DNA from: Vitrella brassicaformis CCMP3155
Lineage: Eukaryota; Protista; Chromerida
Direction: 5' to 3'
DNA: 64,000 bases
Assembly: GCA_001179505.1 (NCBI GenBank)
Contig: CDMY01000253.1
Span: 83,966-147,965, forward strand
The first letter of the stretch is position 1, and each line of letters begins with the position of its first letter. The position numbers were made by a program, and so were the translations under genes. The notes under the pieces were generated by a model that saw only the letters and a program-made list of their open reading frames with translations, had not been told where the DNA came from and made no database searches. Of this stretch, positions 11,073 to 52,677 are shown piece by piece.

Positions 11073-11480
11073 TTCTTTCAATGGCGTTTTTCAGATCATT
11101 TCCGTCATCCTCGCGCGCCATTTGGCCCATTATGGCGCTGTTGCGTTGATGAGATCTGCTCAGCTTATTCTGGTCCTCCCAATAGGCCACTACAGGCCAC
11201 TCCATCATGGTTGTAACCAGCGGGCGCGAAAAATCGAGATCTGCGTCGAGATCGCAACATCGGACAACACAGCAACGCGGCATTGATAGCGGCCGCCACG
11301 GCCATAGTTTCGCCCCCTGTCTATCCGCTGCCCCTATTGATGGATGCCTAATGCTCCATGGAGCCGTGACGCCATCCTCCGCCATCCCCTGCCCTCTCGT
11401 GCCCGCCATCTCGCCGCTGGGCCACCCCATCCCCCGCTCTCCGCTCTAAAGGCTCAGCCGCTCTCTGCAGCCTACCTGCC

Positions 11481-14400
11481 ATGAACGCCCTCCTGCTGCT
11501 GCTGTTGCTCCTCTGGCGCATCCGCTCCGAGCTGGCCGTCTTGGCCACAATGGCTGCGTTCGTGATCTATGTGCGGACCCAACGGCGCCGCCGGATGGCC
11601 AGGGGTAGTGCAAAGGACACTGTGAAGTCTGCCGAGACCACCCCCACCAGTTCCCTCAGCCCCCCACGGAACGCCGGGAGTCCACAGTCGAGCACGCCCC
11701 GAGATAACGTAAGTCAAAAGGGGGAGGGGCACCCTCTGTGTGGTGTGGATGGTTCCGATGGTTTGTGTGGTTTGTGTGGTTGCAGACCATTCCTCGTGAT
11801 CCGCCGTCTTTGTCGACGCGCCAGCCGTCCACGCCGAGTCGTTCGGTGTACGGCGAGGTGGCGGACATTGAGATCAACTCACAACACCGGCTGGCTGACC
11901 TGCTCGATCAGCCCCGGCGACTCGCACTCGTGCTGCTCCGTAAGCAGAAAACGGCCAGCCGCCTCCCTCGTCGGTCGCATCTGCATGCACCCACCCCGTT
12001 GTGCTGTCTGGTTTGTGCGTCGTCAGGTTTGTGTGCCGAGCGTCACCTGCTGGCCCTCGATATCTACGATGAGCTGGTACGTGTGGGCTATCCCTTCGTC
12101 ATGCCCTCAACCACACCCTCAGCCACCCCAACTCCCACCCTCAGCAGCAGCACCAGCGAGAGCACCGACGTGACGGCCGTCACCCCTCAGCCCCAGCCCC
12201 AGCCCCACCCGCCCAACACGGCCAAGAACTGCGAGGGGTGGGGCTGGGAGGAGGTGTTCACAAGCATCGTGCAGCTGTGCATCCACACCAGCCAGTTCGC
12301 CAAGGCGGCTGGGGTGCTGGAGCGGTTCCGGGCTGACCCGTCGCTGCGTCCCACGCTGCACTTCTACGCGTCCATCATGAACGCATATGCGGCCAAACAG
12401 AGATATGAACAGGTGACATGACAAGTGGGGGAGGGGGAGAGGTGCAGAGACGTGTGTGGGGGGGGATTTCTTCTGTGTGTGTGTGTGTATGTGTGGGTTG
12501 TCAGGCTGTCGGTTTGTATGAGTTTGTGTTGGCGGATGGGCTGCAGCCCGACACCGTCATGTTGTCGTGCCTAATCAACCTCGCTGGTACACAGACAGAC
12601 ATGCTCACCTACACACATCCACACATCTTCTTACCCACACATCCCACCCTCCTTGCCATATTACACGTGTGTGTGTGTGTGTGTGTGTGCAGCCGATTTG
12701 AGTTGGAACGAGAAGGCCATCTTCTTCTTCGAACGACTAAAGGAAATCGGGACGCCATCCGTCAAGTAAATGGCACCTGAATGTGTCTCCCTGCCTCCTA
12801 ATCTTTCGTGTGGTGTGTGTGTGGTGTGCAGGGCGTACATGACGTTGGTCCGCATCTACGGCCGCATAGGCGACTACCAGGCAGCCATGGATACCCTCAA
12901 CGTACCACACACACAGACACACACACATGTCGCCATACTTGGACGTCTGCCATGCGTCGTGTGCTGCTTTGCAAACTGCCCCCCTCCCCTCCCCTCATCC
13001 ACCCCACACACACGTACAGGCGATGGTAGCATCTGGCGTGGAGCCCGACACGCTGCTCATCAACCAGGTGTTGCTGGGCTGTGTCAACGGCGGGCGAGTC
13101 GATATCGCAGAAGACATCATCCAAGGCACTCTCATACACTCACGACGTACGCCAGACAGACAGGGAGGGAGGGAGGGAGGGAGACCGCACAGACAGAGAC
13201 GCGATGAGATGTGGCTGGCCGTCCGCGCCTGTGTGTGTGTGTGCAGGCGAGTTGCTGGACATTGTGTCGGTGAACACGTTGCTCAAGGGCTACACGCACG
13301 CAAACCTGTTTGATAAGGCCATGGAAGCGTTCAACGTACGTATGAGGGTGGGGCCCCGATGGATGTGCGGACAGACGCGACCCCTTGCCCCTTTCGTGCT
13401 GTGCCTGTGCAGTGTTTGCTGGGCGGCGAGTTGCAGCTGGCCCCCAACGACATAAGCTTCAACACACTGATCGACGCGGCCATTCGCACACAGGCAACCA
13501 CTCACACACACAGAGAGAGAATGCGCCAGCACACAAACCACCGAGATACCACAGTTCCCTCTCCTGCCTTTCCCGCAGCGACAGGACAGTGCGTGGGAGT
13601 TGCTCTCGATGATGGAGGCCGCGGGCGTGCAGCCCGACTTCTGCACCGTCTCCACCCTCATCAAGGGCATCGTCAACCTCCCTCCCGTCCCCCTCCCATC
13701 CGCCCACGCGCCATTCGGCTTCCAGGGATCCATGAGACAGCACCCCGACACAGAGGCCGCGCTGCTGCACCGGCAGAGGCACATCGACCGCGTGTTGCTG
13801 CTGCTGGCCAAGCTGTCGGCTCGCGAGCCGCCTGTGTCGTTCGTGGCGGACGGCAAACGCACGGCGGGCAAGTTCCGGGAGGTGAGGGAGAATCCACTCC
13901 ATTGTGGGGGTGCCGATTTGGGCGCGGGCATCATGCGTCTGCCTCGTGTTTGTGTGGTTGTCGTCCGTCTCTAGGCGGTGTTTGACAGTATGTTAGACGC
14001 GTGTGTGGCCATGCGGGACCTGGACACACTGCAGCGGGTAGCCAACAGACCAACAGGGGTGGGGGAGGAGACGGGCAAGGTACATTGTATCTGTGTTGTT
14101 CTGCAGACGTTCAAGTTGATGAAGGCGAATGGCGTGACGCCCTCTGCCGTCACATACGGCACACTCATCAATGCCTTCGGACAGGTAAACACAACCCTGC
14201 CGCCCCCTACCCACACACACGTCGCCTCTCTCTCTCTGTGTGTGTGCGTGTGTGTGTATCAGTGCGGTCAGTTGCCGGCGTGTTTCGAGTTGTGGGATGA
14301 GATGCAGCGCGACGGCCTCCAGCCGACCTCGGTGACCTACGGGTGCCTCATCGACGCCTGCATCAACCAGAACGACCTGCACACGGCACACCGCCTCTTC

Positions 14401-47900: not shown

Positions 47901-48821
47901 ACTGACTGGCGAGGGAATGCGCTGCGGTGACAAAAAAGACCGACCGACAAACGACGACAGCTATCCATCCACCTCTGCCACACACATACATCTTCCAAAA
48001 GGATGACGGACGACAGCAAGCCCCCCAACCATAAGCACAGTCGACCGACACACCGAGTGCCCCCGACGCCCAACAGATGAAACACAAAAGATGGAGAACC
48101 GACCGATCGACGACGACATTATGAACGCCACGACAGACACCACACGCGGCATCCATCCGACCAACCAGCCAGCCAGCCAGCAAATCTGTCTGTCTGTCTG
48201 TTTGTCTGTTGCGGCATACAGCACCATGCGGACACCTACACCTGCCCGACTGTGTGTTGTCCTGACGTGTGTGTTTGATCCAGCCCGGCCAGCCCTCGTG
48301 TGTGCTGGGAGCAGGGGGTAGGGATGAGTGGTGGATGGAAGGAAAGATACCGTACAGTCAGTCACTCGGCACCCGGGCAGACGACAAATGAGCGGAACCA
48401 GCCACACGACGCACTCACAAATTGGCGGGGCAGACAGACCAAACAAGATACTCACACCATACACACACACACGACAATCAGCACACGCAGGGCAGTCAAA
48501 CGACGACAAATCACAAACAAAGAGCGGGACAAATCGAGCCATACCAAAAAAGAGGTACGCGTGTCAGTCTGATACGTTTGGGTGGGGGTGGGGGTGACAG
48601 AGACATCACAGCGTAACGGTTCGCTGATGTTGGAAAAAAACACCATCACACAAACCGTTGGCTGGCAGGCAGACCAAACACTCATATCAGCCATATCTCT
48701 CTGGTTCTCTCACACCCAACCTTACACCCAGGCCGTTAGAGAGAATGCATCCCAACCCCCTTATTGTCCCTATCAGTCTGTCCGTCTGCCGGGGGTTTGC
48801 TACCTGTGAGTGTGTGTTGGT

Positions 48822-50414
48822 TTAGTTGTGTGTGTGTCCCTCCCGGCACCAGCCGCAGCACATGCCCTCCGGGAAGAGGAACGACCACACCTTGCCCCAG
48901 AAGCCCGTCTGCTGCTGGGTCCCTCCCTGCGTGCCGTCCTCGGTCGTCGGCTCGCTGCCCGTCTCGGTGTCCTCCTTCTGCAGACGCTGGTCCTCGCCAG
49001 ACACAAACACACTCTCTGCACACACACATACACATGCCGCATCGTCTCGCACTTCCATCTCGTGTGTGACGACATAGAAGGCCACTCACCTTTCGAAACG
49101 GTGGGCAGGTTGGGCGTCTTGGTGCTTACGCAGTGCAGCGGGCGAGCCGACAGACGGCGGGAGGCACGCTTGGTGCGTCCCTCGGTGGTGGCGGTGGCCG
49201 AGCCGACGGTGAAAACGCCCGCACCGTTGCCCGCCGCCTGGTGGTCCGATGGCTGGTCGTCGAAACGCAGAGGTGGCAACTCTGCACACACAAGGGAGAG
49301 AGGAGAGGGAACGGATCTGCAGAGTGAGAAGGTGTTTCTGTTAGGCAGTGCCACTGACCGATGGTGTGTTCTGTGCCTTTGGACGCCTTGGCGGGGCGGA
49401 AGGCATACCCCATACCCAGCTTTATCAGGCTCTTATCTTGCTCCGTCATCAGCCAATCCTTCTCCTCAGACCCCTCCCCCTCTCCCTCGTTAGGACTCCC
49501 GTACAACGACATCTTCTCGAACATGCCACCGTAGAGCTGTTGGAGCCAACACACAGACACACCACATTCACACACATACGCACACGACACACGCGTCACG
49601 TCCAGATCGGTGTCTGCCCACCTGGTGCTCCTTGGCCTTCTGCTGCTGCATGCGGTGGGCCAGGAGGGCCATCTCGGCGTCGGCCTCCTTGCCGTAGCTC
49701 TCGTGTGACGCCTTCAGCTTGCGCAGGTCGGCCACGGCGCCATCGAAGTCGCCAGACAGCCGACGGGCGCACGCGCGACGCAACAACGCCTGCAGACACA
49801 TTCACACACACACACACACATATGAATGAATGCATTCATCTCTCGTTGTGCTGTGGTCACCTTCGGGTGTGTATCATCGTGGGCCAGCAGCAGGTCGGTG
49901 TAGGTGAGGGCCTCGTCCAGCAAGTCGGCCTTGAGGCTGGCCAGGGCCGAGTTGCTCCACACGCTCATGGTGAGCTGCTGCACCTCCTCGGTGTGGGCCA
50001 TCCACGACTTCATGTCGACGGACTTGACCGACTCGAGTGCCTCCATGGCCTTCTTGTACTCCGTCAGCGCCGCCTTGGGGGCCTTCTTGGCCATCAGGTT
50101 GTTGCCCTCGGCCTTGTGGGCCCTGGCACTGAAGAACGAAAGGCACACAGACCGGTGGAATGGGATGGTGCAGTGCCTCATTTGTCGTTGTAGCGTACGC
50201 TGCCAGGTGGCTCCCCATCAAATCCGATGCGCCGGAACTTATGATGCCATCACCACCTGATAACGCATACGCAAGCGCAAAGGCATCCCATTGCAAACCC
50301 ATGGACGAGCATCACGGACGTACAGTGCAGTCATCCCCTCTCACCATGCCCAGTGGCCCTCCCCGCATCTTTGGTGCCAGTGGCACCTCCCGCGTACTCG
50401 TCACGGTCCGCCAT
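48822..50414 (-). CDS. Tetratricopeptide repeat (TPR) protein, FKBP/Hsp90 co-chaperone-like three-TPR clamp
   Basis: ARAHKAEGNNLM...ALTEYKKAMEAL, VWSNSALASLKADLLDEALTYTDLLLAHDDTHPK|ALLRRACARRLSGDFDGAVADL, followed by a QLYGGMF tail typical of FKBP-type TPR regions. Confidence 0.8.
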
Positions 50415-50815
50415 GGCGGCGCAAGGTCTCGCACTCGCTCGACGAAGGGACAAGGGATCGGCAAGGACGGCTGGCGCAGACTTCAATGAACGTTATCAAA
50501 AGCGATACAGTCAGCAACTCAACGGCCTCGAGAGAGCATCAGCTGCCTTTTTCGAGACCGGTTCGTCCCTGCGAGCTTACACATCGGTTTCACGTTTGCC
50601 CTCTTCCGAAGCGAAAGTCAATGGTGAACGAGCGCTAACACAAGAGAGACCGCGGGGTAACAGAAGGATGGCCGTAACGGAAGGATCCCTTCGGCCTTCA
50701 CCTGCTTCTGCCCCAGCGCCTCCACATCCTCCTTGCCTTCGTTCGTTCCCTCTCTGCGCATCTTTCCATCCATCGATTCGCCTCCATTTCGCCTCCTCGA
50801 TCACTCACGACGACA

Positions 50816-51421
50816 ATGGTGCGTGTGCTTGGGCTGCTCGTCCTCCTTGCCCTCGCTGGCATCGCGCATTGCCAGCTCCGCAAACTGGCGCCTGCAGGTG
50901 GGTGGGTGGGTGAGGTGTGTGCACGACCTGAGACATTCGTTCTCGTTCACATTGCTTGTCTCTTCCTTCGCTCTGCAGAGGAGGCGGAGGAGTACATCCC
51001 TGCGCCGACTGTCGTCGGTGTGGTGACCGGCAAGCCCACGGAGCTTCTCAAGGCGGTGGCGGAGCTGTATCTCCAAGCTGAGAACCTCAAGAATGAGCCT
51101 GGCAGCCTGACAGAGCAGCAGCAAGTCTTTGGTGAGGGGCTGGCCGCGAGAATCGACAATGGCGAGGACATCAGCGAGCTGATGGCGAGCAGCGGGCTGG
51201 AGAAGACGGTGTACCATGTCACCGATGACATCACACACACTGTCTATAAGGCCAAGGACATACCCGCATCCACGACCCAGCACGGTAAGCAATGCACCGA
51301 CAACGCATGCTTTGCTTTCTCAGCCTTTCTTCTTGATCCTTATTTGTCAGATGAGCTACCCGTAGCAAGGCCCTGTGGATTTGTTTGCCGGCGTTGGTAC
51401 TGCTACTTCGGGTGCTGGTAG
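50816..51421 (+). CDS. Small secreted prepropeptide (about 152 aa, 3 exons) with a C-terminal four-Cys cationic/aromatic peptide
   Basis: Exons 50816-50897, 50979-51284 and 51351-51421 (GT-AG introns of 81 and 66 nt). Product: MVRVLGLLVLLALAGIAHC-QLRKLAPAEEAEE...acidic region...DELPVARPCGFVCRRWYCYFGCW*. Confidence 0.75.
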   Translation: MVRVLGLLVLLALAGIAHCQLRKLAPAGGWVGEVCARPETFVLVHIACLFLRSAEEAEEYIPAPTVVGVVTGKPTELLKAVAELYLQAENLKNEPGSLTEQQQVFGEGLAARIDNGEDISELMASSGLEKTVYHVTDDITHTVYKAKDIPASTTQHGKQCTDNACFAFSAFLLDPYLSDELPVARPCGFVCRRWYCYFGCW

Positions 51422-52677
51422 ACGACTGTGCCGTGCATGCCGCCTCTATCGTGGCAGCACGATGAATTCGTGAGATCTGCTCTGTCCCTGTGAACTATGA
51501 ACCACCCGCTCTTCTCCTCGTCTGATATGGTATGGTCTGGTCTTGTGTATTTGTGGTATGCTGTTCATGTGGAGATTAGGCGAGTGGCACAGATCGTGTG
51601 GGTCATCTCTTCTGTTTGTCTTAATTCACCAGCTTTTCTTTTCGTCAGGTGTGTCATGGTTCCACGTATTCGTGATGGTTTGCATGGCTGGACTGTATGT
51701 ATTTTTCGTCGCATCGAGTGTCATGCTCGCTGCGGACACGTGTCGCTGTTTGTCGGTTCATTTTCCTAGTGTGTGTGTGTCCGTCTCTTCCTTCATACAT
51801 ATGGACCATGCACATGGAAGGCAGAGAGATCTGCCCATCTGGACACATACCTGTTATTCGTGGAAAAGAAGCGACGCGTATAGGGCATGCACTGCACGTG
51901 GACAGACGGGGGGAGACAGGCAGGCAGAGTGCACACATGCATCATGTAGACACATCTATCTGTTATGTATCTGTGTGTCGTTAGTGTGTCGTGTTAGTGT
52001 GGCGCGTGTGTCGGCACCTCTGTCAGTGTCACTCTAAATGGAGTGAGACAGTGGTCGGGTGGCTGACGTCGGGTGCACACGTGACTGCATACATGTTTCA
52101 TGTCATGGCGGTGCATGGGAGGGATAGGGACACGCCACATGGGATGGATGAGACCGCTCAACACATCATGAATCGTAGAAGGAGCAGTGCAGTGTGTGTC
52201 ATCATGAGATTCAGCTGAGCATCACCACTCCCCTATCCTTGACCGCCTCTCTCTGTCTCTTTCGCCACATTGTTGTCGGCTTTCATCCGACCTATAGGGA
52301 GCAACGCAATGAACGAACGCATCAACCCCTCCACACACAACACAAGTGACGAATAACTGCAAGAACGCCTGACAGCAGCAGGCTTTTCGACACTCAAGTG
52401 GGTGGCCGCGGGATACTCAATTGGCATTCATTTCACCCTCCATGTGATGTGATGAGTCCATCCATTATTCATAGCACTGTGGCTCTGGTGCAACCAAAAC
52501 TCAAAAGATGCCAGCCAATGCACTCACGACTGAGAGGCGGCCCTCACCATAAAGGGACCTGCCCCCACACACTCGTCCGTCCGTCTCTCATTTCCTCTTA
52601 TCATCTCAGCGCAATGCACTCGATCGCGTTGCTCACACACAGCCGCCTCTCTCTGTCTCTCTCGAATCGGTTGTGCC

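What the first reader, a model, noticed from the sequence alone, without database searches (positions are those of the whole stretch)
50816..51421. Candidate beta-hairpin antimicrobial peptide precursor with tachyplesin/gomesin Cys spacing in a protist
The spliced product of about 152 aa is a signal peptide, QLRKL, a long acidic pro-region and, in its own last exon, DELPVA-RPCGFVCRRWYCYFGCW*. The tail has C-x3-C-x4-C-x3-C, the same spacing as tachyplesin I ([17 protein letters not shown]), polyphemusin and gomesin. It is cationic (three Arg, no acidic residues) and rich in aromatics (F, W, Y, Y, F, W). An anionic pro-piece neutralising a C-terminal cationic peptide is the usual layout of many antimicrobial peptide precursors. 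I know of no such peptide from alveolates. It could be a convergent defence, predation or signalling peptide system, matured through the shared leader described above. The sequence and spacing are directly seen; the activity is inference.
Basis: partly seen in the sequence, partly recalled or inferred. Interest (0 to 1): 0.78.

Follow-up and report, generated by a model that had tools for sequence, protein, structure and literature searches.

The report
Secreted Vitrella protein with hypervariable hairpin tail
The coral-reef alga Vitrella brassicaformis expresses a small secreted protein ending in a 17-residue, four-cysteine tail that probably folds as a hairpin; a close relative keeps the cysteines while the residues between them change very fast, which is suggestive of a defence or recognition peptide, but antimicrobial activity and release of the tail remain untested.

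Summary
The three-exon model (50816-50897, 50979-51284, 51351-51421) is confirmed by spliced contigs in three public runs. It equals the deposited 152-aa protein CEL97104.1 ('unnamed protein product', Vitrella brassicaformis CCMP3155). The tail RPCGFVCRRWYCYFGCW, with spacing C-x3-C-x4-C-x3-C, is in the mRNA.

New evidence:
- A syntenic relative in an ENA metagenome is about 91% identical over 2.6 kb. From the first Cys to the stop it is only 65% identical, the most divergent of 2649 sliding windows.
- All four Cys, the length and the stop are kept, and 8 of 11 non-Cys residues between the first Cys and the stop are replaced.
- AlphaFold2 draws the tail as a beta-hairpin, with mixed confidence.

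Against a strict tachyplesin reading:
- Net charge is +3 here, +1 in the relative, and -7 in a paralogue's related tail.
- No dibasic cleavage site precedes the tail and there is no amidation Gly.

The closest known analogue is capitellacin, the C-terminal hairpin of a BRICHOS precursor. The match is not significant (E=1.1) and no BRICHOS domain is present.

The gene belongs to a Vitrella-only family: shared leader exon, orphan mid-domain, Cys/aromatic last-exon tail. This scan had already noted that family on other DNA (the 14-Cys member, s1-248674).

Verdict: a real, fast-evolving secreted hairpin module. An AMP function is plausible but unproven.

The parts
50613..50815 (+). 5' untranslated part of the transcript (start is the furthest contig end, not a mapped 5' end)
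   Evidence: Contig of run X6 begins at 50613 and that of X1 at 50717 (table 8).
50816..50872 (+). Predicted signal peptide (19 aa, ends AHC). It is part of a leader exon shared by at least 17 loci of this genome.
   Evidence: Sequence read directly and leader hits. The cleavage site is inferred from the -3/-1 rule. The -1 Cys is Gly in the relative and in paralogue P0006, so it is not a structural Cys.
50873..50897 (+). QLRKLAPA: conserved post-signal motif Q-[LI]-R-[KR]-L of the leader family; end of exon 1
   Evidence: The motif is present in about 11 of 17 leader loci. Its role is unknown.
50898..50978 (+). Intron 1 (81 nt, GT..AG, in frame and stop-free here)
   Evidence: Joint 'skips 81' in contigs of X1 and X6. 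It is 77 nt in the relative.
50979..51284 (+). Exon 2: acidic orphan mid-domain ending ...GLEKTVYHVTDDITHTVYKAK plus a Ser/Thr-rich linker
   Evidence: 51% identical to paralogue C130, and the motif is shared with C47, C500, C548, C499 and C562. No Pfam or PDB match. dN 0.039 against dS 0.178 versus the relative, exons 1+2.
51285..51350 (+). Intron 2 (66 nt, GT..AG)
   Evidence: Joint 'skips 66' in contigs of X1, X2 and X6 and in JGI transcript contig L027. It is 76 nt in the relative.
51351..51367 (+). Start of exon 3: (D)ELPVA, conserved lead-in to the tail
   Evidence: 1 mismatch in 23 bases against the relative over 51351-51373.
51368..51418 (+). 17-residue tail RPCGFVCRRWYCYFGCW: four Cys (C-x3-C-x4-C-x3-C), 6 aromatics, net +3; predicted two-strand hairpin; hypervariable between relatives
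   Evidence: AF2 strands fall at Cys1-Arg and Tyr-Cys4. 17 of 48 bases differ from the relative with all Cys kept.
51419..51421 (+). Stop codon TAG, at the same position in the relative
51422..52159 (+). 3' untranslated region, about 740 nt (end is the furthest contig end)
   Evidence: Contigs of X1 (to 52121), X6 (to 52159) and X2 (to 52178).

Best explanation
This is an expressed three-exon gene of Vitrella brassicaformis, deposited but uncharacterised (CEL97104.1). It encodes a 152-aa secretory protein of a Vitrella-only family. The family is built from three modules: a shared signal-peptide exon, an orphan acidic mid-domain, and a last exon encoding a Cys- and aromatic-rich tail.

Shown: the mRNA and its splicing, the family, purifying selection on the front two exons, and extreme local divergence of the tail with the four Cys, the length and the stop kept.

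Inferred mechanism: signal peptidase cuts after AHC19 and the protein leaves the cell. The last 17 residues fold into a beta-hairpin stapled by two cross-strand disulfides (Cys1-Cys4, Cys2-Cys3). The hairpin sits at the end of a flexible Ser/Thr/Asp linker. It is the working end that contacts a fast-changing outside partner, most likely other microbes (defence or competition; AMP-like or toxin-like), with the disulfide frame fixed and the surface residues free to change. The mid-domain serves as carrier or intramolecular chaperone for this very hydrophobic tail, as BRICHOS does for worm hairpin peptides. Whether the tail is cut off or works while attached is open.
For: - Splicing and expression: joints in X1, X2, X6; MMETSP transcript and the NCBI protein equal the model.
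- Family: leader at 17 loci; mid-domain at 11 places. The three small members P0011, P0006 and P0013 share the leader, the mid-domain and a Cys/aromatic tail.
- Restricted to Vitrella: a profile search of 1.84 billion representative proteins gave 9 hits. Six are Vitrella proteins or come from the ENA Vitrella relative, one (P0009) was not traced, and two are unrelated cadherin/Big_2 repeat proteins.
- Orthologue: L026 is collinear over 2.6 kb at 90.7% identity.
- Tail divergence: 17 of 48 bases differ against a mean of 4.3 (SD 2.9) per 48-nt window, the maximum of 2649 windows. Fisher p = 2e-8 against the flanks.
- The Cys frame is kept, at p about 0.003 under random placement of the substitutions.
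- Exons 1+2 show dN/dS of about 0.22.
- No other copy of either tail variant exists in the genome, so there is no obvious donor for gene conversion.
- Hairpin: AF2 places strands 97-102 and 105-110 of P0001 in both runs. The mean pLDDT of residues 101-110 is 88 in the single-sequence run.
- The only PDB sequence match of the tail is capitellacin (7ALD), with the same Cys frame and terminal Trp. Capitellacin is the C-terminal part of a precursor with a chaperone-like BRICHOS domain (PMC7761999).
- Charges of the front part and the tail run opposite in four proteins: -11/+3, -8/+1, -8/+3 and 0/-7. This is only a hint, because n=4 and two of the four are orthologues.
Against: - No activity data of any kind.
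- Charge is low and not conserved (+3, +1). The alignable tail of paralogue P0006 is -7. The larger relatives carry acidic Tyr/Cys-rich tails, which do not look like antimicrobial peptides.
- No recognisable processing site lies before the tail.
- Synonymous differences in the tail are raised too (pS 0.8 on only 7.5 sites). Positive selection (dN>dS) is therefore not demonstrated, and balancing selection, local hypermutation or an unsampled donor could give the same picture.
- Only one orthologue is known.
- With a 6-row alignment the hairpin's pLDDT fell below 50.
- The capitellacin match is not significant (E=1.1).
Confidence: 0.4

Rival explanations
1. The 17-mer is cut from an anionic pro-piece and acts as a cationic, membrane-active beta-hairpin antimicrobial peptide of the tachyplesin/gomesin type.
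For: Same Cys spacing. Acidic front part of net -11 and tail of +3. Hairpin prediction. 9 of 17 residues are identical to capitellacin, including the terminal Trp.
Against: Net charge is +3 against +5 for the aligned part of capitellacin and +6 for tachyplesin I as quoted, and it drops to +1 in the orthologue. The charged turn RRWY becomes GWFY. There is no dibasic or RxL site, and Arg-Pro sits at the proposed border. BRICHOS-type AMP precursors commonly have a dibasic site (PMC6265681; PMC7761999). There is no Gly for amidation, whereas gomesin is amidated (PMC10053013). Paralogue P0006's related tail is -7.
Confidence: 0.12
2. It is a wall, matrix or adhesion protein. The Cys/aromatic tail stays attached. 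It either cross-links (disulfide, di-tyrosine) or binds polysaccharide in the thick multilayered wall of Vitrella sporangia.
For: Across the family the common feature of the tails is Cys plus Tyr/Trp, not positive charge. P0003 has 24 Tyr in 84 residues, P0004 ends EQYYYD, P0005 has 14 Cys and P0006 has 8 Cys and 8 aromatics. No cleavage site is present. A linker rich in Ser/Thr/Asn precedes the tail.
Against: Structural tails are not expected to keep exact length and Cys frame while 8 of 11 non-Cys residues between the first Cys and the stop are replaced, against a roughly 9% background. This tail has only 2 Tyr. There is no localisation evidence.
Confidence: 0.22
3. It is a signal or recognition peptide acting between Vitrella cells (pheromone- or self-recognition-like). 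Long-term balancing selection keeps old, very different alleles of the tail.
For: Synonymous and non-synonymous differences are both raised, and only within 48 bases flanked by 93-98% identical DNA. This is the pattern expected around a balanced polymorphism. No donor copy exists in the genome. By my recollection, the alveolate ciliate Euplotes uses disulfide-rich secreted pheromones with a conserved prepro part and a variable mature part.
Against: Only two sequences exist. Sexual or mating biology of Vitrella is not established. The four runs laid carry the same tail as the window (table 3: none), so no polymorphism has been seen. No receptor candidate is known.
Confidence: 0.15
4. The tail binds metal ions through its four thiols, as a secreted metallothionein-like function. 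Earlier notes of this scan suggested this for other His/Cys-rich peptides that share the same leader.
For: The same leader exon heads His/Cys-rich peptide genes and a ZIP transporter according to earlier notes (s1-233248, s1-226986; I confirmed only that the leader is shared by many loci). The 14-Cys tail of P0013 looks metallothionein-like.
Against: The tail has no His, only four Cys in a symmetric ladder spacing, and a high aromatic content. Secreted Cys in an oxidising medium normally form disulfides. The hairpin prediction pairs the Cys.
Confidence: 0.05
5. It is a young orphan gene whose tail has no selected function and is simply drifting or decaying.
For: The family turns over quickly. 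In the ENA relative the orthologue of paralogue C130 has internal deletions and has lost its tail exons. One transcript contig carries a frameshifting 142-nt skip.
Against: The four Cys, the length and the stop are kept despite 35% base change (p about 0.002-0.003). dN/dS is about 0.22 in exons 1+2. The splice sites are kept although intron lengths changed. The gene is expressed in several runs.
Confidence: 0.06

Closest known systems
[quoted passage not shown]
   Same: The peptide lies at the very C-terminus of a secreted precursor, behind an acidic pro-region. Capitellacin has the same C-x3-C-x4-C-x3-C frame and the terminal Trp, and 9 of 17 aligned residues are identical. The pro-domain is proposed to chaperone a hydrophobic, aggregation-prone hairpin (PMC7761999).
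   Different: No BRICHOS domain (Pfam, no hit; PDB profile search, no hit). No dibasic cleavage site, which is common in that group. Charge is +3/+1 instead of +5 or more. Aromatics make up a third of the residues. The organism is an alveolate alga, not an animal. The match is at E=1.1, so this is resemblance and not homology.
Tachyplesin/polyphemusin (horseshoe crab) and gomesin (spider)
   Same: Identical Cys spacing, about 17-18 residues, and a two-disulfide hairpin (predicted here).
   Different: Those peptides are strongly cationic (+6 for tachyplesin I as quoted in the finding) and C-terminally amidated (gomesin: PMC10053013). By my recollection their precursors carry the mature peptide directly after the signal peptide, with the acidic piece behind it. 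Here the order is reversed and there is no amidation signal.
Cone-snail toxin precursors (conserved prepro region, fixed Cys frame, hypervariable mature loops)
   Same: The same evolutionary logic applies. A leader is shared across a gene family, the front part is conserved, the Cys frame is fixed, and the loops are hypervariable, with synonymous change raised as well. The comparison with conotoxin evolution rests on my own knowledge.
   Different: No sequence relation. A single hairpin rather than a knot. No venom context. Only one orthologue pair is available, so selection is not formally shown.
Vitrella leader-sharing secreted Cys-rich peptide families
   Same: The same leader exon and the same mid-domain. 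I verified that P0013 (C47) and P0006 (C130) align with this protein.
   Different: This member has the smallest tail (4 Cys, 17 residues). It is the only one whose frame matches known hairpin antimicrobial peptides.

Membership tests
Tachyplesin/polyphemusin/gomesin-type hairpin AMPs | Four Cys spaced C-x3-C-x4-C-x3-C in a peptide of about 17-18 residues | tested here: met
   Direct reading. Kept in the orthologue.
Tachyplesin/polyphemusin/gomesin-type hairpin AMPs | Strong net positive charge with an amphipathic distribution | tested here: not met
   +3 here and +1 in the orthologue, against +6 for tachyplesin I as quoted. The positions of the charges are not conserved.
Tachyplesin/polyphemusin/gomesin-type hairpin AMPs | C-terminal amidation signal (Gly, usually followed by basic residues) | tested here: not met
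   The ORF ends ...FGCW-TAG. Gomesin amidation: PMC10053013.
Tachyplesin/polyphemusin/gomesin-type hairpin AMPs | Precursor order: signal, mature peptide, then acidic C-terminal extension | tested here: not met
   Here the tail is last and the acidic part lies before it. The order in the known precursors is from my memory and was not checked in a paper.
Tachyplesin/polyphemusin/gomesin-type hairpin AMPs | Detectable sequence homology | tested here: inconclusive
   phmmer against PDB chains found only capitellacin, at E=1.1. Chains under 20 residues, such as tachyplesin, are not in that library.
BRICHOS-related AMP precursors | BRICHOS domain in the pro-region | tested here: not met
   No Pfam family at E up to 10 on exon 2, the 201-aa ORF or P0001. 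The profile search against PDB gave no hit. The AF2 mid-domain model is of low confidence, so a fold-level relation is not excluded.
BRICHOS-related AMP precursors | Mature peptide at the C-terminus of an acidic pro-region | tested here: met
   Front part net -11, tail last.
BRICHOS-related AMP precursors | Dibasic (furin/kexin) site before the peptide | tested here: not met
   ...QHDELPVA-RP.... The feature is described in PMC6265681 and PMC7761999.
BRICHOS-related AMP precursors | Antimicrobial activity of the released peptide | not testable with these tools
   Needs peptide synthesis and assays.
Cathelicidins (protegrin-type) | Cathelin pro-domain | tested here: not met
   No Pfam hit.
Vitrella leader / HT-x-W/Y-K mid-domain / Cys-aromatic tail family (orphan) | Shared signal-peptide exon with Q-[LI]-R-[KR]-L | tested here: met
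   17 loci; the closest is 81% identical over 26 aa.
Vitrella leader / HT-x-W/Y-K mid-domain / Cys-aromatic tail family (orphan) | Mid-domain motif ...G-L-E/K-x-x-x-Y-...-H-T-V/L-W/Y-K at the end of its exon | tested here: met
   Alignments A2 and A4; genome profile search E 8e-33 for this gene and 2e-27 for C130.
Vitrella leader / HT-x-W/Y-K mid-domain / Cys-aromatic tail family (orphan) | Last exon encodes a Cys- and aromatic-rich tail | tested here: met
   P0011 has 4 Cys and 6 aromatics in 17 residues. P0006 has 8 and 8 in 30. P0013 has 14 Cys in 35.

The most novel reading that the evidence does not exclude
Vitrella, the free-living photosynthetic relative of apicomplexan parasites, makes a convergent counterpart of animal hairpin defence peptides. 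This would be a released two-disulfide beta-hairpin with the tachyplesin/capitellacin frame. It would be matured from a precursor whose own non-BRICHOS pro-domain chaperones it and co-evolves in charge with it. It would be one item in a genus-specific, fast-evolving arsenal of secreted Cys-rich peptides, all launched from one shared leader exon.
Probability: 0.15. Interest if true: 0.8.

Novelty: new variant of a known kind. Interest (0 to 1): 0.5.

Why it matters
If the tail is a working hairpin peptide, it would be, as far as I know, the first disulfide-stapled beta-hairpin effector from an alveolate alga. That would be an independent invention of a design known from horseshoe crabs, spiders, pigs and worms. 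Two natural variants (17 residues, same frame, 8 replacements) are already in hand for direct structure-activity comparison.

It also gives a concrete, testable case of very local hypervariability: 48 bases inside 2.6 kb of otherwise about 91% identical DNA. This occurs in a protist that lives on corals among dense bacterial communities and is the closest free-living model for the secretory biology of apicomplexan parasites.

If the tail is instead a wall or recognition module, it still marks the working end of an orphan protein family.

Tried and rejected
- Pfam on exon 2, the unspliced ORF, P0001 and the relatives: no family.
- ESM Atlas by features and by structure: nothing usable, TM no higher than 0.36.
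- PDB profile search with the mid-domain alignment: no hit.
- Word-based protein searches: only the gene itself, its ENA orthologue, and a fragment of the C130 orthologue. No orthologue of the C47 member was found.
- Profile search of 1.84 billion representatives: 9 hits. Six are from Vitrella or the ENA Vitrella relative, one (P0009) was not traced, and two are cadherin/Big_2 repeat proteins that match only the beta-strand part present in the larger relatives.
- JGI metagenome scan with a 17-base anchor before the tail: 30 hits, none of which aligns to the locus, so all are chance.
- Search for a second copy of either tail variant in the genome: none.
- AF2 with the 6-row family alignment did not improve the model (mean pLDDT 51). 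I therefore ran no fold search: the confident part would be about 15 residues and the matches meaningless.
- Papers: no paper links Vitrella to peptides of its own. The ENA sample code appears in no paper.
- I considered and rejected an antisense gene (ORF 50801-51292 on the minus strand), because the GT..AG joints fix the transcript to the plus strand.
- I considered that the stop-free in-frame introns mean an unspliced 201-aa product. I rejected this because the spliced form is what the runs and the deposited protein show, and because the intron lengths are not multiples of 3 in the relative.
- The joined spliced model was never typed or sent to a search tool. Exons were searched by reference, and the database records P0001 and P0011 served as the spliced protein.
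Full report
**What is there.** The window is contig C253 (83966-147965) of a 72,700,666-base, 1064-contig assembly. These are the figures published for Vitrella brassicaformis (PMC4501334). The protein record confirms the organism: CEL97104.1, V. brassicaformis CCMP3155.

At 50816-51421 the plus strand carries an ATG, a hydrophobic leader, and two short GT..AG introns (81 and 66 nt). The last small exon ends ...DELPVARPCGFVCRRWYCYFGCW-TAG.

**Expression and splicing.** Contigs of three public runs laid on 50400-52400 skip exactly these two introns. X1 and X6 show both joints and X2 shows the second. Run X8 holds intron 1 unspliced, as a DNA run would.
- The transcript runs from about 50613 to about 52159, with a 3'UTR of about 740 nt.
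- The deposited 152-aa protein P0011 is identical to the spliced model. It is also listed as a complete MMETSP transcript ORF.
- A JGI transcript contig (L027) confirms the second joint. At the first junction it has an odd 142-nt, frame-breaking skip, which is probably an assembly artefact or a rare aberrant form.

**The family.** The leader exon (signal peptide plus Q-[LI]-R-[KR]-L) recurs at 17 or more loci of the genome in front of different bodies. One is in this window, at 40238-40164 on the minus strand.

The mid-domain ends in ...GLEKTVY...ITHTVYKAK. It has no Pfam, PDB or Atlas relative. It recurs at 11 places in the genome.

Two other small annotated proteins have the same three-part build:
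- P0006 (contig C130, 176 aa) has a 30-residue, 8-Cys tail with net charge -7.
- P0013 (contig C47, 165 aa) has a 35-residue, 14-Cys tail.
- In the three-way alignment, the tails of P0011 and P0006 share P-C-x-x-V-C ... W ... Y-C-Y-[FY] ... C-W. The four-Cys tail therefore looks like a short version of the same module with the charge reversed.

Larger relatives (P0003, P0004, P0005) carry the same motif in front of acidic Tyr- and Cys-rich tails.

A profile search of 1.84 billion representative proteins found nine hits. Six are Vitrella proteins or come from the ENA Vitrella relative, and one (P0009) I did not trace. The other two are unrelated cadherin/Big_2 repeat proteins. No relative from any other named organism turned up.

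Earlier notes of this scan had already described the shared leader and the C47 member. I used them as leads only.

**The key new result.** One ENA metagenome contig (L026, sample ERZ893784) is collinear with window 48580-51587. It is 90.7% identical over 2.6 kb, so it comes from a different Vitrella strain or species.

Identity by region:

| Region | Identity |
|---|---|
| 5'UTR | 93% |
| Exon 1 | 95% |
| Intron 1 | 90% |
| Exon 2 | 93% |
| Intron 2 | 98% |
| Lead-in DELPVARP | 96% |
| 3'UTR | 95% |
| First Cys to stop | 65% (17 of 48 bases differ) |

- That 48-base stretch is the most divergent gap-free window of 2649. The mean is 4.3 substitutions, SD 2.9. Fisher p = 2e-8 against the flanks.
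- The relative's tail reads RPCRLECGWFYCYFVCY-stop. It has the same length, the same stop and the same four Cys. Eight of the 11 non-Cys residues between the first Cys and the stop are replaced, often by two-base changes.
- Random placement of 17 substitutions keeps all four Cys in 0.3% of trials.
- Exons 1+2 are under purifying selection: dN 0.039, dS 0.178.
- In the tail both classes are raised: pN 0.29 and pS 0.8, the latter on only 7.5 synonymous sites. I therefore cannot claim dN>dS. The pattern fits diversifying selection with saturation, long-term balancing selection, or local hypermutation.
- Neither tail variant has another copy in the reference genome that could have served as a donor.
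- In the relative the introns are 77 and 76 nt. The tail is therefore reached only by splicing, and the in-frame introns of the reference are a coincidence.

**Fold.** AlphaFold2 on P0001 (the database record with most of exon 2 plus the tail) gives weakly supported helices. For the tail it gives two strands, Cys1-Arg and Tyr-Cys4, around a two-residue turn. This places Cys1 opposite Cys4 and Cys2 opposite Cys3.
- In the single-sequence run the mean pLDDT of residues 101-110 is 88.
- With the 6-row family alignment the strands are the same, but pLDDT drops below 50.
- I take a two-disulfide hairpin as likely (about two in three), not as shown.

**Comparison with known peptides.** Searching the 22 tail-exon residues against all PDB chains returns a single sequence: capitellacin (7ALD, 'BRICHOS domain-containing protein').
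- It aligns over the whole 17-mer with the same Cys frame and terminal Trp, and 9 of 17 residues are identical. The E-value is 1.1, so the match is not significant.
- Capitellacin is the C-terminal 20 residues of a precursor with a signal peptide and a BRICHOS domain. It is cut after Lys-Arg. The BRICHOS domain is thought to chaperone the hydrophobic hairpin (PMC7761999; PMC6265681).
- That layout is much closer to the Vitrella protein than the layout of tachyplesin or gomesin precursors.
- The Vitrella protein has no BRICHOS domain, no dibasic site (Arg-Pro precedes the first Cys) and no amidation Gly.
- It is also much less cationic: +3, and +1 in the relative, against +5 for the aligned part of capitellacin and +6 for tachyplesin I as quoted. 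It is more aromatic, 6 of 17 residues.
- The charged turn RRWY of this genome is GWFY in the relative. What is conserved is the frame and the aromatic core (Y-C-Y-F), not an amphipathic cationic surface.

**Charge bookkeeping.** Net charge of the front part against the tail:

| Protein | Front part | Tail |
|---|---|---|
| This gene (P0011) | -11 | +3 |
| ENA orthologue | -8 | +1 |
| P0013 | -8 | +3 |
| P0006 | 0 | -7 |

The totals stay at -5 to -8. This is compatible with compensation between carrier and tail, but n=4 with shared ancestry, so it is only a hint.

**Reading.** The solid part, which I hold at over 0.9: this is a real, expressed, secreted-type orphan protein whose last 17 residues form a conserved four-Cys frame with hypervariable filling.

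The functional part is inference. I rank the readings as follows:
- An outward-directed effector or ligand for dealing with other organisms (0.40). The strict cationic tachyplesin-like AMP is counted separately (0.12).
- A wall, matrix or adhesion tail (0.22). This is favoured by the Tyr/Cys-rich acidic tails of the relatives and by the lack of a cleavage site.
- A conspecific recognition peptide under balancing selection (0.15).
- Metal binding (0.05).
- No selected function (0.06).

The family also turns over quickly. In the ENA relative, the orthologue of the C130 paralogue has internal deletions and has lost its tail exons.

**Limits.**
- There is one orthologue only, and the sample behind it is unidentified.
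- The runs are contigs, so they give no expression levels and no strand. The strand follows from the GT..AG joints.
- No signal-peptide predictor was available. The cleavage site after AHC is inferred from the -3/-1 rule, and from the fact that the -1 Cys is Gly in the relative and in P0006.
- Statements on tachyplesin and gomesin precursor order, conotoxin evolution and Euplotes pheromones rest on my own knowledge, not on a paper read here.
- The joined spliced model was not sent to any search tool. Exons were searched by reference, and the database records P0001 and P0011 stood in for the spliced protein.

Noticed in passing
window 40238-40164 (-) and downstream to about 39320: A second gene in the window starts with the same leader exon (MSRALSLLLLIALAGVANC-QLRRLQAEG, then GT). 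It continues into a different multi-exon body. The post-signal motif here is RRL, the form cut by the Toxoplasma export protease, but nothing shows that it is cut.
   Followed up: partly
window 50898-50978 and 51285-51350: Both introns are stop-free multiples of 3, so the unspliced gene is one 201-aa ORF. In the ENA relative they are 77 and 76 nt, so this is a coincidence of the reference and not a conserved feature.
   Followed up: yes
L027 (JGI 3300017148, Ga0186167_110447), junction at window 50843/50985: This transcript contig skips about 142 nt across the exon 1/exon 2 border without GT..AG and breaks the frame. Its second joint is canonical. It is probably an assembly artefact or a rare aberrant form.
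   Followed up: partly
L070 (ENA ERZ893784 k147_1774928) against G000:C130:~11200-12070: In the ENA relative the orthologue of paralogue P0006 keeps the leader. It has internal deletions in the mid-domain and runs straight into the 3'UTR, so the 8-Cys tail exons are gone. It is either a decaying copy or a metagenome assembly gap.
   Followed up: partly
G000:C548, C500, C499, C562 (P0003, P0004, P0005; loci L028-L032): Larger Vitrella proteins carry the same ...GLE...HTLWK motif after an Ig-like, beta-strand-rich part. They end in unusual tails: one has 24 Tyr in 84 residues with runs such as YYYYC and DYYYD, one ends EQYYYD, and one has 14 Cys. These could be cross-linking, sulfation or mineral-binding tails.
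   Followed up: partly
G000:C212, C659, C644 (loci L011-L014, L019, L020): Another group of leader-sharing genes ends in a different conserved tail of the form ...C-x-C-F-x-x-I-[DQK]-C. I saw it only in frame translations and built no gene models.
   Followed up: no
G000:C277 and C553 (loci L018, L023): Two leader variants with C-D-F-V-R-K-L after the signal peptide are followed downstream by similar candidate tails starting (S/F)SWCY...C...C. They may form a further small sub-family.
   Followed up: no
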